This document shows, piece after piece, positions 1 to 54,391 of a stretch of 64,000 nt of DNA. The stretch lies in contig NIVC01000263.1 of NCBI GenBank assembly GCA_002269645.1, positions 1 to 64,000 of the forward strand, written 5' to 3'. A program made the position numbers and the translations under genes. Position 1 is the first letter of the stretch; every line of letters begins with the position of its first letter. The notes under the pieces are model-generated. The model saw only the letters and a program-made list of their open reading frames with translations, did not search any database and was not told the DNA's origin. Source of the DNA: Macrostomum lignano (taxonomy: Eukaryota).

Positions 1-126
1 AACCTCAAGATTTAATCGATCGAATCGAAGATCCATCGAATCCACATGAAGACTCTGCACGACCGTGACCAGGCTAGGCAAGGCGGACTCTCTTCTCAGC
101 CTCTCACCGCTTTCGCCAGAACAATA

Positions 127-1269
127 CACCCATTTTACCTCCTATTTTGAACAAAGTCTTGTTCAAGAAACAAGCAGAACTTCAATTCAAACACTTTAAC
201 AAATAACAGCCCTTGCGAAACTTCAATTCAAACAAAGTCCCTTTCTATTGAAACAGAAGAACTTCAATTCAGACTGTCTGTGCCCAAAATTGTCCCCGAA
301 TGACGCGCATGCATGGATTTGAAATTCAAAAGAAACAAAGTCACATTCTATTTCGACAGATATTTTTGCACATACATTTAGATACGAGTACATTTTTAGT
401 ACATTAATCTAATTTTTGTTTTTCCTGTACTGCATAACTGTACAATCGTTGCGCAATAAGAAACGATATGAATGCTGAAGATCAGATTGAAGAAGACGAT
501 GAATTGCTGGAAGAAGGTGGAATCGGTGAATTTGAACCAGAATTCGATGAAGATATCACGATGAAGATATGAAGTACGCTATTGTAAGCAACAGTGACAG
601 AGACCGTATCATCAGGGCTGCTGATCGTGAGGATGACTTTGTGGAACTGGCGCGCCAACTTGGAGTCAAGAGGTCAACAGCGTACACGATTGTGAGGTCA
701 GGGAGAGCGGAAAAGCAGCCTACGAGATTCCGGACTCCATTCAGGTCAAGCGGCTTCCACCCTACCACCATTTTGACTCCTGTGGAGAACTTAATCTCCT
801 GCTGGAAGGCCAAACAGCAAAATTTTATCGCTCCGACAGCTGGGAATCAATCGATGGTGGACTATCGGCGAGACATTCTGTACAGCATGGTGGACAGAAC
901 CATTGGCTGCATCTCTGCGGACAAGTGCACTGAGTGGTTCAACCATGTGTTTACATGCTTCCCTCTCTGCCTTGGTGGACAGGCAATTTATGGTTAGGTG
1001 CCTCAAGTTGGCCAACTGACACTGTCTTGTTCCTGTTTTTCATTTTACTCTTATGTTCGTCGATATGTTGCGTTTTATCCCTTTGTCTTAATAGAATGTA
1101 ATAGAATGTGACTTTGTTTCTTTTGAATTTCAAATCTGCGCATGCGCGTCATTCGGGGACAATTTTGGGCACAGACAGTCTGAATTGAAGTTCGTCTGTA
1201 GTGTTTGAATTGAAGTTCTGCTTGTTTCTTTAGAACAAGACTTTGTTCAAAATAGGAGGTAAAATGGTG
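127..1269 (+). mobile_element. Internally deleted Tc1-like (IR/DR-type) DNA transposon
   Basis: Long terminal inverted repeats (~127-352 and ~1100-1269; ends CACC(C)ATTTTACCTCC / GGAGGTAAAATGGTG) flanked by TA at 125-126 and 1270-1271. The left TIR has three AACTTCAATTCA direct repeats (178, 219, 260); the right TIR lacks part of this. Internal transposase remnant. Confidence 0.85.
569..997 (+). pseudogene. Truncated Tc1/IS630-family transposase
   Basis: N-terminal HTH-like segment (DRIIRAADREDDFVELARQLGVKRSTAYTIVR) fused directly to a segment resembling the C-terminal DDE motif (ILTPVENLISCWKAK, cf. SPxLNPIENxFSxWK). The catalytic core between them is missing. Lies inside the TIRs. Confidence 0.7.
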
Positions 1270-1271
1270 TA

Positions 1272-1983
1272 ATAACAACAGCAACAATAACAATAAAAAC
1301 AATAACAGTAACAGCATCAACGACAATAACAGCAGCAGCAGTAGCAACAACAACAACAATAATAGTAACCCCCTGGGATTTACTCCCAGCCTGCTGGGTA
1401 ATCAGCAGGCCCTATCCGGCGCCGCGTCTTTGTCGCGGGGGGAGGCAACGCCCGTTCTTCGGGCGGCGAAGAGCGCCGGGAATCGGTCACCGCTCCTGGC
1501 TCAGGGGCGGTGGATGTGGCCCGGTCCGGCCCTCTGTGCTCAGCCTTTGTCGCTGGCTCTGTCAGCGGTAGGGGTTTGGTACCTGGTCCGGTTATTTCGA
1601 GCTCGGTCCGCAGTCAACAACAACAATAATAGTAACAACAACAATAACAATAACGAAAACAACAACAACAACAAAAACAACAACAACAACAGCAACAACA
1701 ACAACAACAACAGCAACGACAATAACAGCAGCAGCAGCAACAACAACAACAACAATAAGATTAATAACAACAACAATAACAACAAACAGCAACAACAATA
1801 ACAACAATACCAGCAACAGACGGTGGTTTGACGGAGTTGGAAGACCTCAGGAAGGAGAACATGGTGGTGAGGTTCCTAAGGGCGGCCCACCCGCAGTGGA
1901 TCGCCTGATGGTTCCGGGCCGAGGACACACACAGCAACAACAACAACAACAATACTAACAACATCAACAACAACAACAATAGC

Positions 1984-2063
<80 letters not shown>
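1272..2063 (+). repeat. (AAC)n microsatellite tracts interrupted by two short unique inserts
   Basis: Imperfect to perfect AAC/AAT/AGC runs at 1272-1367, 1616-1817 and 1932-2063. Confidence 0.95.
1368..1477 (+). ncRNA. Candidate HDV-like self-cleaving ribozyme (slightly degenerate)
   Basis: Manual fold: P1 ACCCCCT(1368-74)/GGGGGGA(1437-43); J1/2 with two hairpins; P2 GGCGC-C(1418-23)/GAGCGCC(1471-77); P3 GCG/CGC; L3 TCTTTGT; P1.1 GG(1444-45); P4 CGCCC/GGGCG; J4/2 GCGAA. Deviations: A.A at the +1 pair and a 1-nt gap in P2. Confidence 0.55.
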
Positions 2064-2737
2064 GTTAGTTCTATAATTATAATAGCTTTGATCAATAAGA
2101 ATGCTGCTTACTTTACTGCAAGTAGCAGAATAAGTTTATCTACTCAATATTAGCGAAGCGCTTCCAATATGGGAATAAAAAAAGTTGATTTTCAGCCTGT
2201 CTGAAGATGCGTTTTCAATCGATGAAGCTTCGGAGGCTGCGTCTCGAGAAGCAGGCAGTTTCACACCTGCTGTCTGTTGATGCGCTCGAAGCCAAAGCAG
2301 AGTTTTGCCTAGTTTACAGAATAAACCACCGGCCTCTGGGATGCGAGAGGCCGGCTTATCAAGTGCCTCGCGTCAGACAAGGAAGTTCCCGGCCGGCCCT
2401 CCCGGTCAAATAAGAAAACAAGAGAAGTACACGCATCACTTGTAGGTGGCAGCAGAGTCAAAGCCTTGCTGATTGACATGACAAACGCGCCCTCCACCAA
2501 CCTCTTTGCTAAGCCCCATATTTCAGCTGCACCTGTCTTCACCTTTTTTGCGAAAATAAACCGCAATAAACATGATGGCGAGGAGGGCACGCGGGGACAA
2601 GTGGCTGTGCGAATTTCCCAGTTCCCGATTGCCCGGAGAAGCGGGCCAGAAACCTTCAGGAAATGCTCAAAGTTTCACTTGTTGCTGGTTTTGGAGACAG
2701 TTCTAAAATGTATTTAATTTTCCTTGGGACCTTGGAA

Positions 2738-3610
2738 AATTAGTCCTTGGCTTCAGTTTTGGGTGTCACCTGTTAGCAATAGTCCTTGGCTTCAGTAGTG
2801 TCACCTGTTTGCAATAGTCCTTGGCTTCAGTTTCGGGTGTCGCCTGTTAGCAATAGTCCTTGGCTTCAGTTTCGGGTGTCACCTGTTAGCAATAGTCCTT
2901 GGCTTCAGTTTCGGGTGTCGCAATAGTCCTTGGCTTCAGCTTTGGGTGTCACCTGTTAGCAATAGTCCTTGGCTTCAGCTTTGGGTGTCACCTGTTAGCA
3001 ATAGTCCTTGGCTTCAGCTTTGGGTGTCACCTGTTAGCAATAGTCCTTGGCTTCAGCTTTGGGTGTCACCTGTTAGTAATAGTCCTTGGCTTCAGTTTCG
3101 GGTGTCGCCTGTTAGCAATAGTCCTTGGCTTCAGTTGTGGGTGTCACCTGTTAGCAATAGTCCTTGGCTTCAGTTTCGGGTGTCGCAATAGTCCTTGGCT
3201 TCAGCTTTGGGTGTCACCTGTTAGCAATAGTCCTTGGCTTCAGCTTTGGGTGTCACCTGTTAGCAATAGTCCTTGGCTTCAGCTTTGGGTGTCACCTGTT
3301 AGCAATAGTCCTTGGCTTCAGCTTTGGGTGTCACCTGTTAGTAATAGTCCTTGGCTTCAGTTTCGGGTGTCGCCTGTTAGCAATAGTCCTTGGCTTCAGT
3401 TGTGGGTGTCGCCTGTTAGCAATAGTCCTTGGCTTCAGTTGTGGGTGTCACCTGTTAGCAATAGTCCTTGGCTTCAGTTGTGGGTGTCACCTGTTAGCAA
3501 TAGTCCTTGGCTTCAGTTGTGGGTGTCACCTGTTAGCAATAGTCCTTGGCTTCAGTTGTGGGTGTCACCTGTTAGCAATAGTCCTTGGCTTCAGTTTCGG
3601 GTGTCACCTG
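2738..3610. repeat. 39-bp minisatellite
   Basis: Unit AATAGTCCTTGGCTTCAGCTTTGGGTGTCACCTGTTAGC, about 22 copies. Explains the 13-aa periodic ORFs. Confidence 0.95.
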
Positions 3611-4793
3611 CTAGCAACCTACACGGCACTGACCTTTCGACAATTCGAAAGTTTCAGTTAAAAAATCAATAAAAAACTGTAATAGTACGAGGTATTTCAT
3701 TCTCTCTGCACTGGACAGGTCTGTCATCAATTTATTAGGCATTAACTAGTCAGGCGCAGCCCTTACTGACATGGTAAAATCGGAGCAAATTGTCAAAGTT
3801 TAGATGATAAACAATTAAGAAAATTTTACTGTCAAGTCATCAAGCAAGTTTTGTTTTGTTTTAATCAGATAAACTCGGGGGGTTAACAGCAATGATTACT
3901 CAGTATTTCACGGAGAAACAAATTCTAAATATACTACTATCCAAGCTGGTTGGGTCTTCGGGCGCATGGAAACCTGCATTTTTAATATAAAACACTGCTG
4001 CTGTTTGTAGCTAACAATACATATGCCAGCTTGCATTAAGGCCACAAGAACAAGCAGCTCCATTGCGTACTGTTTATGAGTTCAGACGAGCTTAGTTTAA
4101 TAGCATGCAGAGACCGACAGATAGGGGTGGACACGGGGGGAGACAAGTAAGTCATGCTATGTGATTTATGACAACTACTAGTATGAGCTGAAACTAGCCA
4201 GCGCTCAGTTCTTTGGTCAGTTAGTTGCACCAAGGCCTACTCAGTGTTTTCTTAGAAAATTCCTCAAGACAGCAGCAGCTAGATAGCAACAAAGTGCTCA
4301 GAGATGTGGGTAGCAGCCATTCGTTTGAGCGGCTGGATTTTCCAAGTCAACAAGGGTGAAATTATCGATCACTGTGTCAAGTGGCAAGAGGGTTGGGTGG
4401 CTTTGCAATGCGCATGGGATACTTCAACAGAGACAGACGGGCAAATGAAACAATGAAAAATGAACGAACCGCAAAGTTTGACAGACGTATGAAAGTCTGC
4501 AAAGCCACCCCGTGTCAAGCATTGAATTCTCTTTGTTCCTAACAAAAGCAACCGTTTTCACGCGTGAGTGACTGACTGAAACGAGAGGGGGGGTCAAACG
4601 GGGTTGCCCTGACTTTGCGATAATTGTGTAAGATTTTCCTACTTTTCCAACATGGGAGTCTGGGCGATGAAGCGGTTTCAGACGCTGCAACAAATCTATT
4701 GCAACGAGAGGAGAGAGAGGTCTGCCCGTGAACTTTGGAAGCATTCGTTTCTGTTCGCTGAAGTCAGAAGAGAGACTGAGACAGAGGCAGACA

Positions 4794-20535
<15,742 letters not shown>

Positions 20536-20605
20536 TGCGCTGGCGTCTCACTCAACCTCTGAGCATCCATCCACTTCGCTACTCCTCACTGTTGCTTACC
20601 GTCTC

Positions 20606-21150
20606 TTGGCATCTCATCCTCTTGGCATCTCATCCTCTTTGCATCTCATCCTCTTTGCATCTCATCCTCTTTGCATCTCATCCTCTTTGCATCTCATCCT
20701 CTTTGCATCTCATCCTCTTGGCATCTCATCCTCTTGGCATCTCATCCTCTTGGCATCTCATCCTCTTTGCATTTCATCCTCTTGACATCTCATCCTCTTG
20801 GCATCTCATCCTCTTTGCATCTCATCCTCTTTGCATCTCATCCTCTTTGCATCTCATCCTCTTGGCATCTCATCCTCTTGGCATCTCATCCTCTTTGCAT
20901 CTCATCCTCTTTGCATCTCATCCTCTCGTTATCTCATCCTCTTGACATCTCATCCTCTTGGCATCTCATCCTCTTGGCATCTCATCCTCTTGGCATCTCA
21001 TCCTCTTGGCATCTCATCCTCTTGGCATCTCATCCTCTTGGCATCTCATCCTCTTGGCATCTCATCCTCTTGGCATCTCATCCTCTTGGCATCTCATCCT
21101 CTTGGCTTCTCATCCTCTTGGCATCTCATCCTCTTGGCATCTCATCCTAT
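20606..21150. repeat. 16-bp minisatellite (GCATCTCATCCTCTTG/T)n
   Basis: Directly visible. Confidence 0.95.
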
Positions 21151-22960
21151 AGTCATCTGAAACTCTAGCTTCTTATCCTCTAAGCTAACAAATTTCCTCG
21201 TTGCAGTCTTTCAGCTTCTGGCAAAGCGACCTTAGCAAGCTAATGAGAACAGCGCCAAAACCAAGGTCGAATCAAAATTGCCTTCCTTTGCCAACAAGGA
21301 GGCAACGGTTTGTACTTTAAAGCCAGCCTCGCTGACTCTGAAGGCCAGTGCGGACGGAAGCGAATGCACTGGTTTTGCAATTGAGCAGTGGATTTCCCGG
21401 CAGCTCAGTGGGGCTCTGGGACCCAGCGCTGATTGACATTAGTGAAGCTGGGCGGAAATCTTGATGGGGCTGCCCGGCCGACTGGAAGGAAGGGGAAATT
21501 TCCCCGCCTGCTCCCCTTTTTTCTGCCACTGTTGCCACCGTCTCAACCCCCGGATATGCCCGTGCCAGCGCCTTCCTCTGTCAGGATTTCTCGCCCTCCC
21601 GTCCGTGTCAGAGGGGCGCTGCTCTCTCTCTCTCTCTCTCTCCTCTCTATCTGCTCCGCGAGGGCGAGGCGGACCTGCCGGACCGCCGCTTCTCTGAGCT
21701 GTTTTTCTGTCTCCCGCCTTTTTTACTCGGCAGCCTCCTCGTCTTCTCTCCTCCCCCATCTAATATCCCCGTGCAACGCCAGCTTTCACGGCAAACGGGA
21801 AGGGGATCGGGGCTGGCGGGGGCGGGAGGCGGGGACCTGATCAGAAGAAATGTGAAATTGTAAATCAGATTCCTGTCCTCTCCCGGCTCCTGAAGAGAGA
21901 GCTCGCTGTCCTCGGATTCGTTCCACGCGAAGCTGCAGCTGCATCAGCGGGAGAGGCTGCTAGCCCGGGGAGCAGATGATTACAAACTTTCCAGTGCCGT
22001 CCTTGGTGCTCGGTGTACTTTTCTGGTTTCACCGACTGTTATGAGACTGGCGGGATGGCCCGACTGTCTAAGCCAGAGAGTGGGGAGCGGTCAGAATTCC
22101 CGATATTCGCACCTGGCCTGGGCTCTGAGAGTTCACCGGGTCGATGCAGGAGGCCAAAGAGCTCAGCTTCTGAGTATGTGGTGTGGCTCCCGTGCTCAAC
22201 ATTGCCCAAGGGAATAAGAGGAGAAATATGGATTATCGATTTTAGCGGCGGCTGAAGTTCCAATTGGGATTTCGCGGGGAGGCGGGCAAAGTCGGACAAG
22301 AGGGGAACAGAAGACGAATAGCTCAATAAGGGGATCAGGATCCCGGTCTTGTGGTCAGGGCAGGATTAGCGGTCCTCACCTGCAGCTAGTGGCATAGTAA
22401 TCCAGTCCGCTGATCCGCCCAGGGCATTCCGGCTGCGGCCCGGGTCAACGCTGGCACTGAAGAGCTGCGGCCGCCGCGCCCTCGATCCGTGGCATCGGCC
22501 TGTGCGGCCCTGCGGTCCAAGTTGACGCTGAAGAACTTGGCCACTCCCTTACTGTCAGGCACCGAAGCTGGCTGGGTTGATAGGCTGAGAGGCTCTGCTG
22601 CTGTCTGGTTCAGGAGGGAATTGCGAAGTTGCTTCGCTCCACTGCCAAGCTGGGACGCCAGATGATAAGGAGGATAGGGGGGGGGGGAGCAGCGAGGGAG
22701 AGGGCGCGCTGTGGGCCAATCATTGACGCTGCAATCTTCTCCAATTGCCTGGCAGCCCCTCCCAGGGCTTCAGCTGTGAGTCGGTGGGAAGGGGGGGGCA
22801 TGCGATCCCAACCAGGTCTGCCCCCTTCCACTATCCTTCTCTCCCCCCTCTATCCCTTCTCTCCACCCCCCCCCACTTCAGTGGCAGGAAGGCACGTATT
22901 GGCCAAAATAGAGAGGGCTTTGACACCCTGGACTGCCGGGAGCTGCCCGTTCTTCTAGTA

Positions 22961-27893: not shown

Positions 27894-28094
27894 ATGGCGG
27901 CCATTTCTCAACAGAAGAAGATGGTTGAGCAGCTGCGTCAAGAGGCCGCCCTGGAGCGAAAGCCGGTGTCCGAGTGCGTTCGCGAGATGCTGCAATTCGT
28001 GGAGAAGGAGAAGGAAGGCGACTGCCTGGTCATCGGGTTCGCCGCCAAGAAGGACAACCCGTTCCAGGAGAGCGGCGGCTGCTCCCTGCTTTGA
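27894..28094 (+). CDS. gng: Heterotrimeric G-protein gamma subunit, paralog 1 (66 aa)
   Basis: QQKKMVEQLRQEAALERKPVSEC...DCLVIGF...NPFQESGGCSLL: GGL domain, NPF motif, CaaX ending in L. Acceptor cccccag directly before the ATG. Confidence 0.92.
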   Translation: MAAISQQKKMVEQLRQEAALERKPVSECVREMLQFVEKEKEGDCLVIGFAAKKDNPFQESGGCSLL

Positions 28095-31464: not shown

Positions 31465-32470
31465 ACAGCAGTTTCTGAGGGTCAATTGGTCTCAGACTGC
31501 AGAAGTTACTGAGGGTCAATTGGGTCTCAGACTGCAGCTGTTTCTGAGGGTCAATTGGGTCTCAGACTGCAGCAGTTACTGAGGGTCAATTGGGTCTCAG
31601 ACTGCAGCAGTTACTGAGGATCAATTGGGTCTCAGACTGCAGCAGTTACTGAGGGTCAATTGGTCTCAGACTGCAGCAGTTACTGAGGGTCAATTGGGTC
31701 TCGGACTGCAGCAGTTTCTGAGGATCAATTGGGTCTCGGACTGCAGCAGTTTCTGAGGATCAATTGGGTCTCGGACTGCAGCAGTTTCTGAGGATCAATT
31801 GGGTCTCAGACTGCAGCAGTTACTGAGGGTCAATTGGGTCTCAGACTGCAGCAGTTACTGAGGATCAATTGGGTCTCAGACTGCAGCAGTTACTGAGGGT
31901 CAATTGAGTCTCGGACTGCAGCAGTTTCTGAGGATCAATTGGGTCTCGGACTGCAGCAGTTTCTGAGGATCAATTGGGTCTCAGACTGCAGCAGTTTCTG
32001 AGGGTCAATTGGGTCTCAGACTGCAGCAGTTTCTGAGGGTCAATTGGGTCTCAGACTGCAGCAGTTACTGAGGGTCAATTGGGTCTCAGACTGCAGCAGT
32101 TACTGAGGATCAATTGGGTCTCAGACTGCAGCAGTTACTGAGGGTCAATTGGGTCTCAGACTGCAGCAGTTACTGAGGATCAATTGGGTCTCAGACTGCA
32201 GCAGTTACTGAGGGTCAATTGGGTCTCGGACTGCAGCAGTTTCTGAGGATCAATTGGGTCTCGGACTGCAGCAGTTTCTGAGGGTCAATTGGGTCTCGGA
32301 CTGCAGCAGTTTCTGAGGGTCAATTGGGTCTCGGACTGCAGCAGTTTCTGAGGGTCAATTGGGTCTCGGACTGCAGCAGTTTCTGAGGATCAATTGGGTC
32401 TCGGACTGCAGCAGTTTCTGAGGATCAATTGGGTCTCGGACTGCAGCAGTTTCTGAGGGTCAATTGGGTC
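31465..32470. repeat. 35-bp minisatellite
   Basis: Unit ACTGCAGCAGTTACTGAGGGTCAATTGGGTCTCAG, about 28 copies. Confidence 0.95.
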
Positions 32471-32508
32471 TGCATGACAGCAAACAGACGAGACACTACA
32501 GGTGGAAC

Positions 32509-36918: not shown

Positions 36919-39900
36919 TTATTTCTCAACATTCCTGTCAGCGTTTTTAGAAGGCGGCAACAGACAGCAAGTGCCATCAGACAGTACTTCAATGCCGGCG
37001 CGTTTCAGAGACGGCTGTTGCGGCAACACGTCCTTGCTAGCCAATCTACAGATGCAGATGGCAGCTGGCCATTCTGGTCCTGTCAGGTCCGGTGGCAACT
37101 CGCGAATGAAACTAGTCAGTAGGCCAGACGACACAAAGCCGTAGTCCACTGCCAAAACGGTGGCGGAGACCTCTTGAGAGTTCCGAGTATCGATGGACAG
37201 TACGCGACCGCGGTACCATTCACCACCACCATGGGATTTCATGGTGAAGAAAGCAACAGACTTTCCTGGGTACAACTTGGTTACAGGCTTGATAAGCAAG
37301 CCAAGCTTATTGTACCAGAAGTGCATGCGCTTAGCTAGCCGATCTACCTGCTGGAGAGACTGCGGCAGCAGGTGCACCATCAGTTGGCTGGAGTTTGATG
37401 ACGGCAGGATAATAACAGAGTAACGGCCTGGCAGCGGAACTGGTGTAGGCACAATGGTGCAACCATAATCATGTACCATACTAGCGAACACAGCACGCAA
37501 CTGATCTGGAGTGTACCGCAGTCGAGGTCTGTATTGCTGGTGCTGCCGCTTTTCTGCCTCGCTGTTGCAGGTGTTCGATTGTTTGGAGCAGTTGGTGATG
37601 GGTTGAAGACAGCAAACGGTGGCCAAAACTTCCGAGTTTTCTGGACGATCGCTACCTGATTCGTAACTCATTGGCGTCAATGGGACTTTGCACCAGCTTT
37701 TATGAAAATTTTCATTATTTTCCCCGTCGAAAAAGATACTCGTACTGGCTGGTAGCACGGCCGGTTTCAATTTGTTATTATTGATAGAAGCCAAAGATGC
37801 AGCAGAATTGGTGACTTCAGTGACTGTAAGAGACTGCAGAATGTCTTTTGGTATGCTGACCGTGGGCGGCTCAGAATCAGTTGACGGATCAATGCTGAAC
37901 TGCAACTCTCCATATTCGACGATCTTGTCGCAGGCGTCAGTAGTAAAGCAGCAATTATCGCTAGATTGCAGAATGCATTCGAAAGCAAAAGCATCTCGGT
38001 ACAACTCTTCACGCTGCGGCAAAACCTTCAACTGCAGCTCGTCTAGCGAGCCTTCCTCTTCGTTGCCATAGTCGATGAACAACACGCGAATCGAGTCGGA
38101 GCTGACAGCCTTTACCTCGGCTCGGTACCAGCTTCCTTCGAACAGGCCAATGCAGAACTGTCCTATCTGAGGTGCAGTCAAAGCCTCTGAGCTGGCTGCC
38201 TTAATATCTAGTTGGCTCTGTAAAGAAGCCAGATCATCTAGATCTCGGCTGCTCTGAATCCACAAGCGAAGACGTCTCGGATCGTCTTGAACTTGAATAG
38301 CGAAAACAACCATAGCGGAAACCAAGCCGAACAAATGTTTTTTGGAGACGCTCCATTTACACTGAGGGACAGAAATGCTGGAGGTAGTCGTATATGCTTC
38401 TTCTTTCATGTGAGCACAATTTTTATCTACATTATCATTAGTTATAGCACAAAACTCTGTAGATTCTTCTGCAGTGTTACTAGCGCACAAACTGTGTTGA
38501 GCAACGGGTCCTATAATCTGATTCACGCCAGGACAAGGCAGAATGCACTCGAAAGCAAATGATTCACAGTAAAGCTCCTCTTTGTAGGGCAAAGGTTTTA
38601 GTCTAAAAATACTAGGTGAGCCCTTCACTTCAATACCATAGTCCAGAAGAAACAATTCAATTGTCACTGAAGATGTGGCAAGAATCTCGGCACGGCACCA
38701 TTGGTCCTTGTGAAAAACAAGACAAGTCTGGCCAAGGCTCGGCTGTTTTAAATCTGACGCTGAATCAGCTTCAATTTTGAACAAGTCTTGCAGAGCCTTT
38801 AGCTTTACACTATCGCAGGTTCGATGAACCCAAAGGCGCAGATATTCCTTATTGTCACCAGTTGGGACACAAGCACACACAGTACCAGTAAAAGTGCCGG
38901 TAAGTTGACGTCGCTTTACTCGCCAAATTTTTGTACGAGAATCGTGCTCCATTATAGCATGCTGCGATGCATCTCTGACTTCTCGAATGTCATTGGTAGA
39001 TGAACTGACTGGAGCATCCTTTTGAGGCTCATCATAAGCAGCACTGATGGGTTCCAAACTGCAAATCCTCGATTCCAAAGCTGCCAGAAGGTCGGAGTCG
39101 ATACCAATAGTGCGTAATCCAGAAGAAAAATCTTGCAAAATGTTTACCGTAAGACAATCAAAGGCAGTGATTAAAGCATCAGCATTCGAAGTGAATCGGC
39201 ACTTGCTAGAAGATTCCAGAATACATTCGAATGCAAGAGCGTCTCGGTACAACCCTTCACGATGCGGCAAAACCTTCAACTGCAGCTCGTCTAGCGAACC
39301 TTCCTCTTCGTTGCCATAGTCGATGAACAACACGCGAATCGAGTCGGAGCTGACAGCCTTTACCTCGGCTCGGTACCAGCCGCCTTCAAACAGACCAATG
39401 CAGAACTGTCCTATCTGAGGTGCAGTCAATGCCTCTGAGCTGGCAGCCTCAACGTCGAGTTGGCTCTGCAAGGAAGCCAACTCATCCAGATCTCGGGTGT
39501 TCTGAATCCACAAGTGCAGCTTAGTACCATCATCTAGAAGCGTTGCGTTGCTTACAACTCCTGTGAATGTTCCGCTTTGGATGCTCTTCGAAACTGCCCA
39601 TGTCTCCGACTTATTGGCTTGTGATTCAATCTGTTGCTTCCCTAGCTCAATAACTACGGTATTGTTTGCGTTGGATGCAGCAGAATCCGTGACTTCAGTG
39701 ACTGTAAGAGACTGTAGAATGTTTTTGGGTATGCTGACCGTGGGCGGCTTAGAATCAGTTGACGGATCAATGCTGAACTGCAACTCTCCATACTCGACGA
39801 TCTTGTCGCAGGCGTCAGGACTAAAGCAGCGGTTGTCACTAGATTCAAGAATGCATTCGAAAGCAAAAGCATCTCGGTACAACTCTTCACGCTTCGGCAA

Positions 39901-40519
39901 AACCTTCAACTGCAGCTCGTCTAGCGAGCCTTCCTCTTCGTTGCCATAGTCGATGAACAACACGCGAATCGAGTCGGAGCTGACAGCCTTTACCTCGGCT
40001 CGGTACCAGCCGCCTTCGAACAGGCCAATGCAGAACTGTCCAGCCTTTGGCTTATCCAAAGCTTTACAGCTGTCAGCATCAGCGTCAAGCAGATTTTGTA
40101 ATGATGTCAGTTTATCAAAATCGCTGCTGTTTTGAACCCATAGGTGCAGGTTCTTCAAATCCTGAGTGGCAGAACTAACAACGCCTGTAAATGAATCAAT
40201 CCATTTTTGCTTTTTTATGAGGATATTATCTTCGTCAATTTCAAATTCCGAATGGATTAAATTTTGTTTTGCATCCAGCTCGAGGGCATTATTACTTTCA
40301 GTCCTAGTGAGACTCAATTGTTGATTATTTTCCACCAAAAAATCCATGATTTTTTTGTCAACCGAGACGACTGGTAGGTCAAAAATGATGTCACTTTGGA
40401 CAGTAAATTCTATTGGGCCCAGTTGCAGAAGTTGCTCAAAAGCATTGGCCACGAAATTCATCGTGACAGGGCAGGGGCTATTGCATTCGACTCTGCTTTT
40501 TCGTAAGTTCAGAGAATCA
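36919..40519 (-). CDS. Multi-Tudor (TDRD/Tudor-family) protein, single large exon, 5 extended Tudor domains
   Basis: Three CIGLFEG(G/S)WYRAEV...FIDYGNEE domains, one diverged (WCRAEI..LLDYG) and one C-terminal (WYRGRV..VDYG). Acceptor cttttttcag at 40520-21, first in-frame ATG at 40461, TAA at 36919. The true 5' end is uncertain. Confidence 0.88.
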
Positions 40520-41429
40520 CTGAAAAAAGTAGGAGAGGATGACAAATATATACTTTATATATATATTACAACGTAGCAAAATCACGATTACTCCTAAAAT
40601 GTTGCACCAAAACGCTAAGCGACACCGCGAAATACATAAATAACTACTGATGGCAAAAACATTCTATAACTTAAAAATAACTAAACATTCAAGGCCAAGC
40701 TCAGCTTAAAGATTGGTTTCCTACTCGTAAATACGAGGGTTGTACAAAAAGTTCTGTGTATTACATAACGACTTTAAAATGATAACCAGCAGACACAAAA
40801 CTTTAAACTTATCTTAGGCATCATTTCACTTAAAATATACACCCTCAGCCTCCATGCACTTCTGCCATCGCCACACGAGCCTCTCCTCAATTCTAGCACT
40901 AATGTCATTCTTTGTCATAGTTTCGATTCCCACCTCATATGCCTAGTTCAACTTATCTGAAACACTGGCCCTGCATTAAGTCCTTGATGCGGGAAAAGAG
41001 GAAGAAGTCGCATAGACTGAGGTCTGGCATGGGGGGCATGGCGGATGCGGAAGTACTTCCCACCCCCATGACTTGACGGCTGTCAGCACAATCTGCTTTA
41101 AATGAGGAGATGCATTGTCTTAAAGCAAAATTGGGCCCCCTCCCCAATTAGAGCCCCCTCCAATGATATGCATCATATTACTGCATCATATCGAAGATCT
41201 CAGTTGGCAAACAAACCTGCAGGACATGAAACTTGATCATGGCTCGCTCGCTGATCATGACCTTGTGCAACAAAGTCAGCCATGGGTGAAAGAGGAAAAT
41301 ATTCACTACACCATTTTATCCTCAATTTTGAACAAGGAGAATTTCGGAACTGACAAACTCCTCTTCAATATTGACAGATCAAGCTTCAGTTTTGACAAAC
41401 TCTGGTTCAATTTTGACAATGCACATTTA

Positions 41430-42725
41430 CGAGGGGTATTTCAGAAGTTCGTAGAAAGCCGGCTTTGCATAAAGCTATAGCCTTGAAACTTTTCACAAAT
41501 ACTATTTCATATATCTACAGCCTGCAGCTAAATTTTCAGCAAAATTGATTGAAATCGCCACCAGAAATCTGCGATCAAACTCTGAACCCCCTACTGTATT
41601 TCCTGCGTTCTCCAAAGAGCAGTCAAGAGCCATAATGCTGTTCCTGTTTCGTAGAGGCTCTAGCGCAAATGAAGCTGCTGCTGAGATGAGGACTGTACTG
41701 CAAGATGAAACACCATCCCTCAGCACTGTGCACAAGTGGTTTGGTCGCTTTAGAGCCGGCCATTTCGATCTGGCTGACAAGCCAAGAGAAGGTCGTCCAA
41801 GAACATCAACAGACTCCTTGAATGTGGCTGCTGTGCAGTCGGCGTTGAACGAGGATGCAAGACTGACGATCGAGAGGATGGAGGAGAGTCTGGGCATTGA
41901 GGCCACATCGATTTGGAGGATCTTGCACGAAGATCTTGGTGTCACTAAGAAAGCTGCCAAATGGGTGCCACGAATCCTCTCGCCTGAGCAGAAAATTGAT
42001 TTCTGCAGAAATTTCCTGGATCAGTTCAAAGATGGAGCATCTGCAAACTTCCAGAACATCGTAACAGGTGATGAAGCCTGGTTCCATCAGTACGACCCGC
42101 CAACTAAATCACAGTCGATGGTTTTGCCACTCAAAGGAGCCCCACCTCCCCAAAAGGCGAAGCGGGTGAGGTCAGGTGGGAAAATCATGTTCGCGATTTT
42201 CTTCTCGCCCAGAGGCATTGTGGCCTCAGTGCCAGTTGAGCAAGGCCGCACTGTGACCTCTGATTGGTATGTGACCAGCTGCTTGCCTGCTGTGTTCAAT
42301 TCCATCGCAGCTGGCCGTGGCAAAGCTGAGCTACGCGCTACTTCCTGCATCACGACAACGCACCTGCACACACAGCAAACAACACAGTGCAGCACATTCG
42401 TGCTTCTGGCATCAAGCTGCTGAGCGCTCCGCCTTATTCACCGGATCTGGCGCCGTGCGATTTCTGGTTATTTCCGAAAATCAAGCAGCCGCTGCGTGGA
42501 AAGTTGTTTGAGACTCGTGATGAGCTGATTTCTGCTGTGAATGAGCAGCTCAACTCCATTGAAAAAGCTGATTTTAGGGGTTGCTTTGATAGCTGGCTGC
42601 AGCGCATGCGAAAGTGCATAGAAATCGGTGGCGAGATCGGATTTAGATGATGATTATGTGTCGCAACCCGCTTTTTGATATCTGCTTGCTTTCTATCAGT
42701 TTCTACGAACTTGAAATACCCTTCG
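41430..42725 (+). mobile_element. Full-length (1296 bp) mariner element
   Basis: ~28-bp TIRs CGAGGGGTATTTCAGAAGTTCGTAGAAA / TTTCTACGAACTTGAAATACCCTTCG, TA flanks at 41428-29 and 42726-27. Confidence 0.92.
41545..42650 (+). pseudogene. Mariner D,D34D transposase with one frameshift
   Basis: HTH, WVPRIL, IVTGDEAW; frameshift near 42340 before FLHHDNAPAH; YSPDLAPCDFWLF. The second and third catalytic Asp are separated by 34 residues (counted manually). Confidence 0.9.
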
Positions 42726-42727
42726 TA

Positions 42728-43902
42728 GTCAACTTCTCCTGGGAGAATTCGGTAACAAAGTAATCCAATGAAAGCCTGAACGGGGCTGAAGTGAGCTGTG
42801 CAAAATCAGCTTATTCTGACTTTGCTTTTGGGATCTACAAGTATTGATAAAATTTAGGGGGGCCGTAGCCCAGCGGTAGCGCAGCTGCTCTGGTGTGCCA
42901 GCGACACAGGCTCGATTCCAAGTGCAGTCACATTAATTTGGGGCTGAATTGGAATCTCGGCTTGGCTCTGCTCGTGCAATTAACGGCCTTGAGAGCCAAC
43001 CGCCCAAGGCGCAGTGAAGTGTACATGCCTAACGATAATATAAAGTTAGGGCCGCTGTACACTCCTGTGTGAGTGTGTGCCTGCGTACGTATCCGCGCGC
43101 TTGTATGCCTGCTCAGGGGAGTCGGCGGAATGGGCAGTAATGCCTCTCGCCGGTTGTGTGCTTATGTCGCTTAAAGTGCGCCAGGGTGCACACAACCCCC
43201 TGCCTCTAATAAAAAAAATTGATAAAATTTATTTTTCTTCATCCTTTACACACAAACTAAAATAGCCTGACTGGTTGGGGCTGCTAAGTCTGATTCTATT
43301 TTGACAGAGTTGCTTCAAAACTGACACTTTATGGTTTGTGTACCCAAAAAGTCCGCTTCATTTTTGACAACTCCGAATCAATATTGAACAGTTTACAATC
43401 AATTTTTACTAAAAAACTTTTTGAAAAAGATTTTGACAATTTTGACTAAGAATCGTTTAGCTTGGAAATGTCGAGGCAGTCTTTTGTCTATGACAGTTTG
43501 TTTTTTGTCAAGTCTTGAGGCAGCCTGCGCCTCGAATCTAATTGGCTACTGCTTCAGTTTTTACCATCGAGGTTGGTCAGATCAACGTATGCACATCTTA
43601 CGTGCACAACGTAAACTGTTCAATATTGATTCGGAGTTGTCAAAAATGAAGCGGACTTTTTGGGTACACAAACCATAGAGTGTCAGTTTTGAAGCAACTC
43701 TGTCAAAATAGAATCAGACTTAGCAGCCCCAACCAGTCAGGCTATTTTAGTCTGTGTAAAGGATGGAGAAAAATAAATTTTATCAATACTTGTAGATCCC
43801 AAAAGCAAAGTCAAAATAAGCTGATTTTGCACAGCTCACTTCAGCCCCGTTCAGGCTTTCATTGGATTACTTTGTTACCGAATTCTCCCAGGAGAAGTTG
43901 AC
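42728..43902. mobile_element. Foldback/MITE with long inverted arms
   Basis: GTCAACTTCTCCTGGGAGAATTC ... GAATTCTCCCAGGAGAAGTTGAC; arms ~300 bp after removing the SINE; TA flanks at 42726-27 and 43903-04. Confidence 0.88.
42857..43217 (+). mobile_element. tRNA-derived SINE, copy 2
   Basis: Head GGGGGGCCGTAGCCCAGCGGTAG...GGCTCGATTCC, polyA tail, 14-bp TSD ATTGATAAAATTTA (42843-56 and 43218-31). Confidence 0.9.
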
Positions 43903-46420: not shown

Positions 46421-49400
46421 TTAAGCAGAATATAAAAACTTCAGACACACGTCCGCTATGCTGGCTCGAGGGAGGCCCAATTCCAATAAACAATTAATGC
46501 TGAACTTCAACTCTCCGAATTCGATAATCTTGTCGCACGCTTCGGGACTAAAGCAGCGATTGTCGCTAGATTCAAGAATGCATTCAAAAGCAAAAGCATC
46601 TCGGTACAACTCTTCACGCTGCGGCAAAACCTTCAACTGCAGCTCGTCTAGCGAGCCTTCCTCTTCGTTGCCATAGTCGATGAACAACACGCGAATCGAG
46701 TCGGAGCTGACAGCTTTTACCTCGGCCCGATACCAGCCGCCTTCGAACAGACCAATGCAGAACTGTCCTATCTGAGGTGCAGTCAATGCCTCTGAGCTGG
46801 CAGCCTCAACGTCGAGTTGGCTCTGCAAGGAAGCCAACTCATCCAGATCTCGGCTGCTCTGAATCCACAAGTGCAGCTTAGTACCATCATCTGAGGGTGT
46901 AACGAGGCTTACAACTCCTGTGAATGTTCCGCTTTGGGTGCTCTTCGAAACTGCCCATGTCTCCGACTTATTGGCTTGTGATTCAATCTGTTGCTTCCCC
47001 GACTCAATAACTGCGGCACTGTCTGCGTTGGCTGCAGCAGCATCCGTGACTTCAATGACTGTAAGAGACTGCAGAATGTCTTTTGGTATGCTGACCGTGG
47101 GCGGCTCAGAATCAGTTGACGGATCAATGCTGAACTGCAACTCTCCATACTCGACGATCTTGTCGCAGGCGTCAGGACTAAAGCAGCGGTTGTCACTAGA
47201 TTTCAAAATGCATTCGAAAGCAAAAGCATCTCGGTACAACTCTTCACGCTGCGGCAAAACCTTCAACTGCAGCTCGTCTAGCGAGCCTTCCTCTTCGTTG
47301 CCATAGTCGATGAACAACACGCGAATCGAGTCGGAGCTGACAGCTTTTACCTCGGCCCGATACCAGCCGCCTTCGAACAGACCAATGCAGAACTGTCCTA
47401 TCTGAGGTGCAGTCAATGCCTCTGAGCTGGCAGCCTCAACGTCGAGTTGGCTCTGCAAGGAAGCCAACTCATCCAGATCTCGGCTGCTCTGAATCCACAA
47501 GTGCAGCTTAGTACCATCATCTGAGGGTGTAACGAGGCTTACAACTCCTGTGAATGTTCCGCTTTGGGTGCTCTTCGAAACTGCCCATGTCTCCGACTTA
47601 TTGGCTTGTGATTCAATCTGTTGCTTCCCCGACTCAATAACTGCGGCACTGTCTGCGTTGGCTGCAGCAGCATCCGTGACTTCAATGACTGTAAGAGACT
47701 GCAGAATGTCTTTTGGTATGCTGACCGTGGGCGGCTCAGAATCAGTTGACGGATCAATGCTGAACTGCAACTCTCCATACTCGACGATCTTGTCGCAGGC
47801 GTCAGTACTAAAGCAGCAATTATCGCTAGATTGCAGAATGCATTCGAAAGCAAAAACATCTCGGTACAACTCTTCACGCTGCGGCAAAACCTTCAACTGC
47901 AGCTCGTCTAGCGAGCCTTCCTCTTCGTTGCCATAGTCGATGAACAACACGCGAATCGAGTCGGAGCTGACAGCTTTTACCTCGGCCCGATACCAGCCGC
48001 CTTCGAACAGACCAATGCAGAACTGTCCTATCTGAGGTGCAGTCAATGCCTCTGAGCTGGCAGCCTCAACGTCGAGTTGGCTCTGCAAGGAAGCCAACTC
48101 ATCCAGATCTCGGCTGCTCTGAATCCACAAGTGCAGCTTAGTACCATCATCTGAGGGTGTAACGAGGCTTACAACTCCTGTGAATGTTCCGCTTTGGGTG
48201 CTCTTCGAAACTGCCCATGTCTCCGACTTATTGGCTTGTGATTCAATCTGTTGCTTCCCCGACTCAATAACTGCGGCACTGTCTGCGTTGGCTGCAGCAG
48301 CATCCGTGACTTCAATGACTGTAAGAGACTGCAGAATGTCTTTTGGTATGCTGACCGTGGGCGGCTCAGAATCAGTTGACGGATCAATGCTGAACTGCAA
48401 CTCTCCATACTCGACGATCTTGTCGCAGGCGTCAGTACTAAAGCAGCAATTATCGCTAGATTGCAGAATGCATTCGAAAGCAAAAACATCTCGGTACAAC
48501 TCTTCACGCTGCGGCAAAACCTTCAACTGCAGCTCGTCTAGCGAGCCTTCCTCTTCGTTGCCATAGTCGATGAACAACACGCGAATCGAGTCGGAGCTGA
48601 CAGCTTTTACCTCGGCCCGATACCAGCCGCCTTCGAACAGACCAATGCAGAACTGTCCTATCTGAGGTGCAGTCAATGCCTCTGAGCTGGCAGCCTCAAC
48701 GTCGAGTTGGCTCTGCAAGGAAGCCAACTCATCCAGATCTCGGCTGCTCTGAATCCACAAGTGCAGCTTAGTACCATCATCTGAGGGTGTAACGAGGCTT
48801 ACAACTCCTGTGAATGTTCCGCTTTGGGTGCTCTTCGAAACTGCCCATGTCTCCGACTTATTGGCTTGTGATTCAATCTGTTGCTTCCCCGACTCAATAA
48901 CTGCGGCACTGTCTGCGTTGGCTGCAGCAGCATCCGTGACTTCAATGACTGTAAGAGACTGCAGAATGTCTTTTGGTATGCTGACCGTGGGCGGCTCAGA
49001 ATCAGTTGACGGATCAATGCTGAACTGCAACTCTCCATACTCGACGATCTTGTCGCAGGCGTCAGTACTAAAGCAGCAATTATCGCTAGATTGCAGAATG
49101 CATTCGAAAGCAAAAACATCTCGGTACAACTCTTCACGCTGCGGCAAAACCTTCAACTGCAGCTCGTCTAGCGAGCCTTCCTCTTCGTTGCCATAGTCGA
49201 TGAACAACACGCGAATCGAGTCGGAGCTGACAGCTTTTACCTCGGCCCGATACCAGCCGCCTTCGAACAGACCAATGCAGAACTGTCCTATCTGAGGTGC
49301 AGTCAATGCCTCTGAGCTGGCAGCCTCAACGTCGAGTTGGCTCTGCAAGGAAGCCAACTCATCCAGATCTCGGCTGCTCTGAATCCACAAGTGCAGCTTA

Positions 49401-53888: not shown

Positions 53889-54156
53889 CATGCGCAACCC
53901 CCCTGATTTACACTGGCCATGCGACTTACTTTTTGACCAAAAATGCGACTTACCTGTGAAAGAAACCCTAAAGCAAAATAAACGCTTATTTGGGTAAACG
54001 GCAGGAGTAACTATGACTGTCTTATCAGGCCTAAATGCCTCGGCATCTAATTAGTACTACGTCCATATTCTTTGGGGTGGCATTTTTGCGACTTACCCCT
54101 GGTCCACCACAATTTACGGTGGCCAGATCGGCCAGGTCGGCCAGCAGTTGCGCATG
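53889..54156. mobile_element. 268-bp MITE inserted in the upstream pseudo-LTR
   Basis: TIR CATGCGCAAC / GTTGCGCATG flanked by TA. Absent from the homologous downstream pseudo-LTR. Confidence 0.7.
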
Positions 54157-54365
54157 TATGTTTTCCGTGTTTTTTAAGTTTTGAGAGAGTATACCAACTA
54201 GGGGCTTGCACTGCTCTGCCAAAATTTGTCTCCAACTTGCCTATTGATCTTTGGACAAGTTTACTGTACAGAATAATTCGTTACTCATCAAAAAAATTTC
54301 TTTTGCCTCACACAAATATTTATTATCATCAGACTCAGTTTTTTGTTCATACTATTAAAATAAAC

Positions 54366-54391
54366 CTGAAGATGCACCATAGAGTGCAAAA
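54366..54391 (+). ncRNA. Degenerate hammerhead ribozyme core in the Penelope pseudo-LTR
   Basis: CTGAAGAT-GCAC-CATAGA-GTGC-AAAA, versus the canonical CUGANGA..stem II..GAAA. The counterpart at 57084-57110 is further mutated. Confidence 0.55.

What the first reader, a model, noticed from the sequence alone, without database searches (positions are those of the whole stretch)
1368..1615. Candidate HDV-like ribozyme heading a short element embedded in (AAC)n
Seen: all HDV-fold elements appear in the correct order (P1, P2, P3, L3 TCTTTGT with U20/G25 equivalents, P1.1 GG, P4, catalytic C in GCGAA at 1467, P2'). The J1/2 carries two clean hairpins (GGGA/TCCC; GCCTGCTG/CAGCAGGC). About 140 nt of unique sequence follows, then an AAC tail. 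Deviations: A.A at +1 and a missing T in P2. Established: R2, RTE and Ingi-type non-LTR elements and their SIDE/RIDE derivatives use 5' HDV-like ribozymes. Inference: a ribozyme-headed, microsatellite-associated SINE-like family, perhaps undescribed in this lineage.
Basis: partly seen in the sequence, partly recalled or inferred. Interest (0 to 1): 0.7.

Follow-up and report, generated by a model that had tools for sequence, protein, structure and literature searches.

The report
Ribozyme-headed retroposon in flatworm microsatellite
A 245-base insert in an (AAC)n repeat of the flatworm Macrostomum lignano starts at the predicted cut site of an HDV-type self-cleaving RNA and has a 22-base target duplication on each side, so it looks like a small retroposon of a known kind in a lineage where none was reported.

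Summary
All HDV-fold elements lie at 1368-1480 (+) in canonical order. These include a perfect 7-8 bp P2, L3 UCUUUGU, P1.1 GG, CAAC, a 5-bp P4 and catalytic C1467 in GGCGAA. A canonical descriptor hits once in the window, never in 19.2 Mb of window shuffles, and twice in 19.8 Mb of GC-matched shuffles. Rfam gives only a sub-threshold match (F. prausnitzii HDV model, 24.9 bits against a gathering score of 44).

New here: the island is flanked by an exact 22-bp direct repeat, CAACAACAACAATAATAGTAAC, at 1348-1369 and 1615-1636. This 22-mer occurs nowhere else in the window. It marks a target-site duplication around an insert at about 1370-1614. The 5' edge of the insert matches the predicted cleavage site within 1-2 nt. 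The flanking (AAC)n is therefore the target, not simply a tail.

The window is M. lignano contig NIVC01000263.1, positions 1-64000. A second, unrelated island (1819-1934) in the same tract has its own diverged flanking repeat.

Best reading: one copy of a ribozyme-headed, non-coding non-LTR retroposon (SIDE/NARTc-like), inserted by target-primed reverse transcription. Copy number, covariation, the partner element and cleavage activity could not be tested, because no other M. lignano DNA was reachable. This is a new member of a known kind, of moderate interest.

The parts
1348..1369 (+). Left copy of the target-site duplication, CAACAACAACAATAATAGTAAC. It is a distinctive variant stretch of the host (AAC)n tract.
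   Evidence: The exact 22-mer occurs only here and at 1615-1636 in the whole window, on either strand. It abuts the island directly.
1370..1614 (+). The inserted element: 245 nt, give or take 1 nt at each end because C1369 and C1615 could belong to the element or to the duplication. It is 66.5% G+C, against 32% in the flanks.
   Evidence: Bounded by the duplication. Composition. Single copy in the window. No ORF with a domain, no tRNA and no other Rfam match.
1368..1374 (+). P1 5' strand. C1369-U1374 pair with G1442-G1437 (5 C-G pairs and 1 U.G pair). A1368 lies opposite A1443. Predicted cleavage is 5' of C1369 in the 6-bp register, or 5' of A1368 in the 7-nt register.
   Evidence: P1 duplex -11.6 kcal/mol. 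Register by comparison with the Rfam RF02682 alignment.
1375..1415 (+). J1/2 insert with two hairpins (1375-1387 and 1389-1410) and a CCUAU linker.
   Evidence: Recovered in the MFE fold. The size is well within the 23-700 nt reported between P1 and P1' in R2 ribozymes (PMC3774820).
1416..1422 (+). P2 5' strand, CCGGCGC. It extends to U1415 by a U.G pair.
   Evidence: Perfect complement of 1473-1479. Duplex energy -15.6 kcal/mol.
1424..1436 (+). P3 (GCG/CGC) enclosing L3 UCUUUGU. U1427 and G1432 are the U20 and G25 equivalents. C1428 and U1429 pair with G1445 and G1444 to form P1.1.
   Evidence: Aligned to P3/L3 of RF02682 with high posterior probability.
1437..1449 (+). P1 3' strand GGGGGG, then A1443, P1.1 GG (1444-1445) and J1.1/4 CAAC.
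   Evidence: AGGCAAC is identical to the RF02682 consensus.
1450..1464 (+). P4 hairpin, GCCCG-UUCUU-CGGGC.
1465..1472 (+). J4/2, GGCGAAGA, with the putative catalytic cytosine C1467.
   Evidence: The RF02682 consensus here is GGCUAAGA.
1473..1480 (+). P2 3' strand, GCGCCGG(G). It closes the outer pseudoknot.
1481..1614 (+). Highly structured 3' domain. It has a 12-bp hairpin at 1487-1513 and a 16-bp hairpin at 1542-1576 inside a longer stem. By inference this is the part recognised by the mobilising reverse transcriptase.
   Evidence: RNAfold gives -67.2 kcal/mol for 136 nt. There is no similarity to anything else in the window.
1615..1636 (+). Right copy of the target-site duplication. It matches the left copy at 22 of 22 positions.
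1263..2063 (+). Host imperfect (AAC)n tract that received the insertion. It contains an older higher-order duplication (1271-1368 against 1667-1764, 84% identical).
1819..1934 (+). Second, unrelated GC-rich island in the same tract. It is flanked by a diverged direct repeat (CAACAATACCAGCAACA at 1802-1818, CAACAATACTAACAACA at 1947-1963). It is probably an older, independent retroposed fragment followed by about 4 AAC units.
   Evidence: CAACAATAC occurs only at these two places in the window. No alignment to island 1. 61% G+C.

Best explanation
Positions 1370-1614 are one copy of a short, non-coding, non-LTR-type retroposon whose first ~110 nt encode an HDV-like self-cleaving ribozyme.

Proposed life cycle:
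1. A source copy has no promoter of its own and is transcribed as part of a longer read-through RNA (inferred).
2. The ribozyme folds and cuts at its own 5' edge, just upstream of C1369. This removes all upstream host sequence and defines the RNA 5' end. The fold is shown; the cleavage is inferred.
3. The structured 3' domain is bound in trans by the reverse transcriptase of an autonomous element (inferred). The partner could be a LINE with an AP-type endonuclease, such as RTE, or a Penelope-like element.
4. A nick in the (GTT)n strand of an (AAC)n tract provides the primer, ...GTTGTTGTTG-3'. This primer can anneal to CAACAACAAC at or after the RNA 3' end. Target-primed reverse transcription with a staggered second nick produces the 21-22 bp target-site duplication. 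The duplication is shown; the priming detail is inferred.

The insertion is recent: the two duplication copies are identical, while older duplications in the same tract are only 84% alike.
For: - All HDV-fold elements and the conserved nucleotides (U20/G25 equivalents, P1.1, CAAC, G-C-G-A-A with C1467) are present in canonical order.
- The MFE fold recovers the nested helices.
- The only Rfam model that matches is an HDV-type ribozyme (E = 0.004 for the 131-nt stretch). It matches exactly over L3, P3', AGGCAAC, P4 and GGCNAAGA.
- The descriptor hit 0 times in 19.2 Mb of window shuffles and 2 times in 19.8 Mb of GC-matched shuffles.
- An exact 22-bp direct repeat, unique in the window, abuts both ends of the island. 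A length of 21-22 bp fits TPRT-type retroposition and does not fit cut-and-paste or LTR elements (established knowledge).
- The 5' boundary from the duplication (1368|1369 or 1369|1370) matches the predicted cleavage site (1367|1368 or 1368|1369). It excludes the alternative P1 registers at 1379-1381.
- There is no coding capacity and no tRNA or other small-RNA head.
- The 3' domain is strongly structured.
- A second insert flanked by direct repeats lies in the same (AAC)n tract. This suggests the tract is a preferred TPRT target.
- Precedents exist: R2 SIDEs, L1Tc/NARTc, RTE and baggins ribozymes (PMC3774820, PMC6765202); RTE elements with SSR 3' ends (PMC2887409); microsatellite insertion bias of Penelope-like elements (PMC8557442).
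Against: - Only one copy was seen. No homologue was found, so there is no covariation and no consensus.
- Rfam scores are below every gathering threshold (24.9 against 44 bits).
- The usual G.U pair at the base of P1 is absent (C-G, or A opposite A). This copy, or the whole design, might cleave poorly.
- No candidate autonomous partner shares its 3' end within the window. The only RT there is a decayed Penelope-like element with no similarity to it.
- The descriptor was written after seeing the hit, and at whole-genome scale a few chance hits are expected.
- A translated search for spurious ORFs over other copies found nothing. This is weak evidence, because the M. lignano proteins in that database appear to be annotated ones only.
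Confidence: 0.7

Rival explanations
1. The insert is a genuine retroposed fragment (a SINE or LINE piece, or a processed transcript), but the HDV-like fold within it is fortuitous or long dead. The 5' end is then simply where reverse transcription or integration stopped.
For: - The sub-threshold Rfam score.
- The non-canonical first P1 pair.
- GC-rich shuffles of the same composition do give rare full descriptor hits, 2 in 19.8 Mb.
- There are no homologues to show selection on the fold.
Against: The motif would have to arise by chance and also start within 1-2 nt of the independently defined 5' boundary, out of roughly 40 possible positions. It also matches non-required consensus features (AGGCAAC, GGCGAAGA, an 8-bp P2, a 5-bp GC P4). 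I estimate the joint chance for this window at about 3e-4, combined with the boundary coincidence.
Confidence: 0.12
2. The insert is a unit-length copy of a small ribozyme-processed RNA, possibly circular or rolling-circle: an HDV-type counterpart of the hammerhead 'retrozymes'. It would have been reverse-transcribed by a Penelope-like or LINE enzyme. The 3' end (..GCAGUC) would then be the sequence that precedes the cleavage site in the multimeric RNA.
For: - The insert starts exactly at the ribozyme cut site, is only ~245 nt long, and is highly structured throughout.
- Animal hammerhead retrozymes of 170-400 nt are proposed to be non-autonomous partners of Penelope-like elements (PMC7761336; bioRxiv 10.64898/2026.07.22.740005).
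- A Penelope-like element remnant is in the window.
- Penelope-like elements favour microsatellite targets (PMC8557442).
Against: - Only a single genomic unit is present, not a tandem array, so one ribozyme cannot define the 3' end.
- The predicted fold is branched, not rod-like.
- There is no ribozyme on the minus strand.
- No HDV-type retrozyme has been described in the literature searched.
Confidence: 0.07
3. This is not an insertion at all. It is a residual piece of unique host sequence around which (AAC)n expanded, and the 22-bp repeat arose by slippage or unequal exchange within the microsatellite.
For: The tract does contain higher-order duplications (1271-1368 against 1667-1764, 84% identical).
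Against: The 22-mer carries a four-substitution variant of three consecutive AAC units (AAT AAT AGT) that occurs only twice in the window. It abuts both edges of the island exactly and is 100% identical, while the other duplication is 84% identical. Slippage would not place a 245-bp island of 66% G+C between the two copies.
Confidence: 0.04

Closest known systems
R2 SIDEs (short internally deleted elements of R2; Eickbush & Eickbush 2012, described in PMC3774820)
   Same: A non-coding element made of a 5' HDV-like ribozyme plus a 3' region for the partner's reverse transcriptase. The ribozyme trims the element out of a co-transcript at its own 5' end, as in Drosophila R2. P1 is 6-7 bp and a sizeable J1/2 loop is normal.
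   Different: R2 and its SIDEs insert at one 28S rDNA site. This element sits in an (AAC)n tract with a 22-bp target duplication. No R2-like partner or shared 3' UTR was seen. L3 is UCUUUGU, against the R2 consensus CCUCCUCGUGG over P3/L3/P3' (PMC5035012).
L1Tc / NARTc (and ingi/RIME) of trypanosomatids, with the ribozyme-bearing first 77 nt (PMC6765202, citing Sanchez-Luque 2011)
   Same: A dispersed, TSD-flanked LINE (about 12 bp for L1Tc) with an HDV-like ribozyme as its first nucleotides. From my own knowledge, NARTc is its short (~0.26 kb) non-autonomous partner and carries the same head. This is the closest match in size and architecture.
   Different: The phylum differs (kinetoplastids against a flatworm). 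Those elements end in poly(A) and come from polycistronic transcripts. Here there is no poly(A), and the 3' end runs straight into (AAC)n. No sequence similarity was tested or expected.
RTE and baggins elements with 5' HDV-like ribozymes (Ruminski et al. 2011, as summarised in PMC6765202), and RTE elements with SSR 3' ends (PMC2887409)
   Same: Promoter-less elements released from read-through transcripts by a 5' HDV-like ribozyme. RTE 3' ends consist of simple-sequence units and are associated with microsatellites. They make variable-length TSDs through an AP-type endonuclease.
   Different: Those are autonomous elements with an RT ORF, or 5'-truncated copies that lack the ribozyme. This one has the ribozyme but no ORF. 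Membership of the RTE clade cannot be judged without the partner.
Rfam RF02682, the HDV-like ribozyme of Faecalibacterium prausnitzii (the best-scoring model)
   Same: Near-identical core: P3/L3 pattern UCU..GU, P1' followed by AGGCAAC, a short GC P4, and GGCNAAGA.
   Different: The score is 24.9 bits against a gathering score of 44. The candidate's real P1 lies 41 nt further upstream, so the model mis-pairs P1. The source is bacterial, so the resemblance reflects fold constraints, not descent.

Membership tests
HDV-like self-cleaving ribozyme (fold class) | Nested double pseudoknot with helices in the order P1, P2, P3, P3', P1', P1.1, P4, P2' | tested here: met
   All helices were located: P1 of 6 bp, P2 of 7-8 bp, P3 of 3 bp, P1.1 of 2 bp (C-G and U.G), P4 of 5 bp. 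The nested part has an energy of -44.4 kcal/mol and the P2 duplex -15.6 kcal/mol.
HDV-like self-cleaving ribozyme (fold class) | Catalytic cytosine in J4/2 (C75 equivalent) followed by R-A-A, and an L3 with the U...G pair | tested here: met
   C1467 lies in GGCGAAGA. L3 is U1427-C-U-U-U-G1432-U.
HDV-like self-cleaving ribozyme (fold class) | G+1 forming a G.U wobble at the base of P1 | tested here: not met
   The +1 nucleotide is C1369 (paired with G1442), or A1368 opposite A1443. R2 ribozymes tolerate a 6-7 bp P1 with mismatches at the top of the stem (PMC3774820), so this lowers the expected activity rather than excluding the fold.
HDV-like self-cleaving ribozyme (fold class) | Reaches the curated score of an Rfam HDV-type model | tested here: not met
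   No match at gathering thresholds. The best is RF02682 at 24.9 against 44 bits. The covariance model cannot see the pseudoknotted P2, and the 41-nt J1/2 insert makes it mis-place P1.
HDV-like self-cleaving ribozyme (fold class) | Compensatory changes in the helices among homologues | not testable with these tools
   No homologue was reachable.
HDV-like self-cleaving ribozyme (fold class) | Site-specific self-cleavage that depends on the catalytic C | not testable with these tools
   Needs a bench assay.
Ribozyme-headed non-autonomous non-LTR retroposon (SIDE / NARTc type) | The ribozyme occupies the extreme 5' end of the inserted copy | tested here: met
   The duplication puts the 5' boundary at 1368|1369 or 1369|1370. 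Predicted cleavage is at 1367|1368 or 1368|1369.
Ribozyme-headed non-autonomous non-LTR retroposon (SIDE / NARTc type) | Flanked by a target-site duplication of a length typical of TPRT | tested here: met
   A 22-of-22 direct repeat, unique in the window.
Ribozyme-headed non-autonomous non-LTR retroposon (SIDE / NARTc type) | No protein-coding capacity | tested here: met
   The insert is 245 nt. The one open frame has no relatives among 5.8 billion proteins.
Ribozyme-headed non-autonomous non-LTR retroposon (SIDE / NARTc type) | 3' end shared with an autonomous partner element | tested here: inconclusive
   Nothing in the window or in L001 resembles the 3' domain. The rest of the genome could not be searched.
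Ribozyme-headed non-autonomous non-LTR retroposon (SIDE / NARTc type) | Multiple dispersed copies with the same 5' end and different flanks | tested here: inconclusive
   One copy was found in 64 kb plus 19 kb. The genome-wide count is not obtainable with these tools.
R2 / R2-SIDE specifically | Insertion at the conserved 28S rDNA target site | tested here: not met
   The target is an imperfect (AAC)n tract, and Rfam finds no rRNA in the window.
Classical SINE | Head derived from tRNA, 5S or 7SL RNA with an internal Pol III promoter | tested here: not met
   ARAGORN finds no tRNA in 1-4000. There are no Rfam small-RNA matches.

The most novel reading that the evidence does not exclude
The 245-nt insert is a retroposed unit-length copy of a small HDV-ribozyme-processed RNA, possibly circular. 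It would be an HDV-type analogue of the hammerhead 'retrozymes', mobilised by a Penelope-like or LINE reverse transcriptase with a preference for (AAC)n tracts in flatworms.
Probability: 0.07. Interest if true: 0.7.

Novelty: new member of a known kind. Interest (0 to 1): 0.38.

Why it matters
If confirmed, it would extend ribozyme-headed non-autonomous retroposons to free-living flatworms (Macrostomorpha). These elements are so far documented for R2 SIDEs in flies and L1Tc/NARTc in trypanosomes. M. lignano is a regeneration model whose genome is very repeat-rich and poorly annotated for repeats.

It is also a clean single-locus case. The RNA 5' end predicted from a ribozyme fold can be checked against an independent landmark, the target-site duplication.

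It also points to (AAC)n tracts as preferred landing sites for target-primed reverse transcription in this genome. That bears on how microsatellites and retroposons seed each other.

It does not reveal a new mechanism.

Tried and rejected
- **Self-BLAST for other copies.** Self-BLAST of 1368-1615 and of 1811-1935 against the window found none.
- **Rfam.** There were no matches at gathering thresholds over the whole window. Permissive scans gave only RF02682, plus low-complexity CrcZ noise on the (AAC)n.
- **Spurious ORFs over other copies.** The frame starting at 1367 is open through the whole element, so I used its translation to look for ORF calls on other copies. It found no relatives.
- **Paralogous or allelic loci for a filled-versus-empty site comparison.** The 381-aa exon ORF at 4794-5939 gave nothing; low-complexity candidates swamped the search. 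The paralogous contig NIVC01004554.1 (L001, 94-98% identical) probably ends near window position 4-6 kb.
- **Metagenome scan.** I scanned with a gapped core pattern that leaves P1' and P4 free. All 31 hits are chance matches inside GC-rich bacterial coding sequence, with no GCG upstream and no P1 or P2.
- **Other collections.** The gapped core pattern found nothing in viral contigs. An exact 24-mer of the core found nothing in viral contigs or in the bacterial/archaeal genome contigs.
- **Exact look-up of the neighbouring transposon's ORF**, to sample more M. lignano contigs. It is not on record.
- **Island 1 against island 2.** No alignment, so they are not two copies of one family.
- **Alternative P1 registers at 1379-1381** (6 of 7 pairs, with G.U). 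Rejected, because the RNA would then start 10-12 nt inside the insert.
- **tRNA-derived head.** None found.
- **Hammerhead ribozymes near the Penelope-like remnant.** None at E <= 1.

Full report
**What the window is.** The Tudor-domain ORF at 36919-40545(-) is 97% identical to an NCBI protein of Macrostomum lignano. An exact look-up of the 66-aa G-gamma protein encoded at 27894-28094 returned contig NIVC01000263.1 of assembly GCA_002269645.1. The record coordinates equal the window coordinates. The window is therefore the first 64 kb of that 361-kb contig of this free-living flatworm. A second contig, NIVC01004554.1, is a 94-98% identical paralogue or haplotype of window positions ~27.5-46 kb.

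**Checking the observation.**
- P1 5' strand: (A1368)CCCCCU1374.
- J1/2: 41 nt with two clean hairpins (1375-1387 and 1389-1410).
- P2: CCGGCGC 1416-1422 with GCGCCGG 1473-1479. This is a perfect 7 bp, or 8 bp with U1415.G1480.
- P3: GCG/CGC around L3 UCUUUGU 1427-1433.
- P1 3' strand: GGGGGG 1437-1442, then A1443.
- P1.1: GG 1444-1445, which can pair with C1428/U1429.
- J1.1/4: CAAC.
- P4: GCCCG-UUCUU-CGGGC 1450-1464.
- J4/2: GGCGAAGA, with C1467 in the catalytic position.

The unconstrained MFE fold of 1368-1615 recovers P1, both J1/2 hairpins, P3 and P4 (z = -3.25 against shuffles). Rfam gives nothing at gathering thresholds. With permissive thresholds, the only structured match is the F. 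prausnitzii HDV-like ribozyme model RF02682, at 24.9 bits against a gathering score of 44. That model aligns L3, P3', AGGCAAC, P4 and GGCNAAGA with high posterior probability. It mis-places P1, because the true P1 lies beyond the 41-nt J1/2 insert, and it cannot score the pseudoknotted P2.

**Is it more than chance?** I wrote a descriptor with the canonical constraints. It requires a 3-bp P3, a 7-nt L3 of form UC...G., GG, a P4 of at least 4 bp, C[GU]AA, a P2 of at least 6 bp, and at least 6 of 7 P1 pairs within 80 nt upstream.
- It hits this locus and nothing else on either strand of the window.
- It gives 0 hits in 19.2 Mb of dinucleotide shuffles of the window.
- It gives 2 hits in 19.8 Mb of shuffles of the GC-rich element itself.

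The motif is therefore very unlikely by chance for one window. At whole-genome scale a few chance hits would be expected, and the descriptor was written after seeing the hit. The fold alone is suggestive, not conclusive.

**The new observation: a target-site duplication.** The island is bracketed by an exact direct repeat, CAACAACAACAATAATAGTAAC, at 1348-1369 and 1615-1636. This 22-mer contains a four-substitution variant of three consecutive AAC units (AAT AAT AGT). It occurs only at these two places in the window, on either strand. Older duplications within the same tract (1271-1368 against 1667-1764) are only 84% identical.

This is the signature of a recent insertion with a 21-22 bp target-site duplication. 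Removing 1370-1636 restores a continuous imperfect (AAC)n tract. A duplication of that length fits target-primed reverse transcription. It does not fit DNA transposons or LTR elements (established knowledge).

The insert is 1370-1614, give or take one C at each end. It is 66.5% G+C against 32% in the flanks. Its 5' edge (1368|1369 or 1369|1370) falls on the ribozyme's predicted cleavage site (1367|1368 for a 7-position P1, 1368|1369 for a 6-bp P1). The P1 5' strand could have started at roughly 40 positions inside the insert, so this coincidence is worth about a further 20-fold. It also rules out the alternative P1 registers at 1379-1381 that the descriptor allowed.

P2 needs no extra T. The A opposite A1368 need not be a defect. 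In the RF02682 consensus the P1 3' strand is likewise followed by A-GG-CAAC. R2 ribozymes typically have a P1 of 6 or 7 bp, some with mismatches at the top of the stem, and P1 and P1' are separated by 23 to more than 700 nt (PMC3774820). Still, the usual G.U wobble at +1 is absent. The activity of this copy is an open question.

**Context.** The (AAC)n on both sides is the pre-existing target, not simply the element's tail. The first ten bases of the right-hand repeat (CAACAACAAC) could equally be a short tail, or the microhomology by which a ...GTTGTTGTTG-3' primer annealed to the RNA 3' end (inference).

A second GC-rich island (1819-1934) lies in the same tract and is unrelated in sequence. 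It is flanked by CAACAATACCAGCAACA (1802-1818) and CAACAATACTAACAACA (1947-1963). These are the only two occurrences of CAACAATAC in the window. About four AAC units lie between the island and the right-hand repeat. This looks like an older, independent retroposition into the same tract, and it suggests that (AAC)n is a favoured landing site.

Immediately upstream (130-1267) is a DNA transposon with ~220-bp terminal inverted repeats.

The element has no tRNA-like head and no coding capacity. Its 136-nt 3' domain is strongly structured, at -67.2 kcal/mol with 12-bp and 16-bp hairpins.

**Mechanism proposed.**
- Shown: the fold elements, the insertion, the duplication, and the coincidence of the two boundaries.
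- Inferred: a promoter-less source copy is transcribed by read-through.
- Inferred: the ribozyme cuts at its own 5' edge.
- Inferred: the 3' domain recruits a reverse transcriptase in trans, and TPRT at a nicked (GTT)n strand inserts the copy.

The partner is unknown. [quoted passage not shown] Penelope-like elements are also plausible, because of their microsatellite insertion bias (PMC8557442). A decayed Penelope-like element (an RT fragment, plus a GIY-YIG-like stretch read by eye) lies at ~55-57 kb in the window. It shares nothing with the insert.

**Comparison with known systems.** The architecture works like two known kinds of element.
- R2 SIDEs: a ribozyme plus a 3' UTR and no ORF (PMC3774820).
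- NARTc, the short partner of L1Tc, and L1Tc itself, whose first 77 nt carry an HDV-like ribozyme and which is flanked by ~12-bp TSDs (PMC6765202).

It is not an R2 or SIDE member, because the 28S target criterion is not met. It is not a classical Pol III SINE. No paper in the held library links Macrostomum or flatworms with HDV-like ribozymes.

**What could not be done.** No other M. lignano DNA could be searched by nucleotide sequence. The following all failed to yield a second copy:
- a translated search for ORF calls over other copies;
- a search meant to pull paralogous loci;
- a gapped-pattern scan of metagenomes, whose 31 hits are all bacterial coding sequence;
- scans of viral and prokaryotic collections;
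- an exact look-up of a neighbouring transposon ORF.

Copy number, covariation, the partner element and activity therefore remain untested.

**Verdict.** This is a new member of a known kind, of moderate interest.

Noticed in passing
window 1819-1934 (flanking repeats 1802-1818 and 1947-1963): A second GC-rich (61%) island lies in the same (AAC)n tract and is unrelated in sequence to the ribozyme element. It is bracketed by a 15-of-17 direct repeat containing CAACAATAC, which occurs only at these two places in the window. About four AAC units follow the island. It is probably an older retroposed fragment.
   Followed up: partly
window 130-1267: A DNA transposon with long terminal inverted repeats (outer arms 130-195 / 1200-1267 at 100% complementarity, inner arms 253-352 / 1100-1199 at 96%) and a decayed internal ORF (551-994, no Pfam match). 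It abuts the start of the (AAC)n tract. Its left flank (120-127, AACAATAC) also looks microsatellite-derived.
   Followed up: partly
window ~54900-57000 (+): A frameshifted remnant of a Penelope-like retroelement. There is an RVT_1 match at 55560-55991, below Pfam's cut-off (25.1 against 29.6 bits). A GIY-YIG-like stretch at 56563-56784 was read by eye only. No hammerhead ribozyme was detected by Rfam at E <= 1 in 52500-64000.
   Followed up: partly
window 41473-42647 (+): A mariner/Mos1-type transposase remnant (HTH_48, and DDE_3 above its cut-off), split by a frameshift.
   Followed up: partly
window 36919-40545 and 46421-52630 (-): Very long intron-poor Tudor-domain ORFs with about 630-bp internal tandem repeats. 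They are annotated in NCBI as one 2580-aa gene. The paralogous contig NIVC01004554.1 carries a 97% identical copy.
   Followed up: partly
window 2741-34949 (many arrays): An unusually dense series of minisatellites, for example 39-mer x23 at 2741-3617, 21-mer x158 at 8859-12105, 20-mers at 13330-14639 and 15522-16263, and 35-mer x29 at 31466-32471. Many lie within the span of the CUB/LDLa-domain gene (751-aa product, minus strand, about 4794-22395).
   Followed up: no
window 61752-62591: A 187-bp satellite, 4.5 copies, 97% identical.
   Followed up: no
window 19779-20141 and ~42930-43260: Two inverted copies of a ~360-bp repeat. The same translated stretch ([21 protein letters not shown]...) appears on opposite strands. 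One lies in an intron of the CUB gene and the other next to the mariner remnant. The repeat family was not identified.
   Followed up: no
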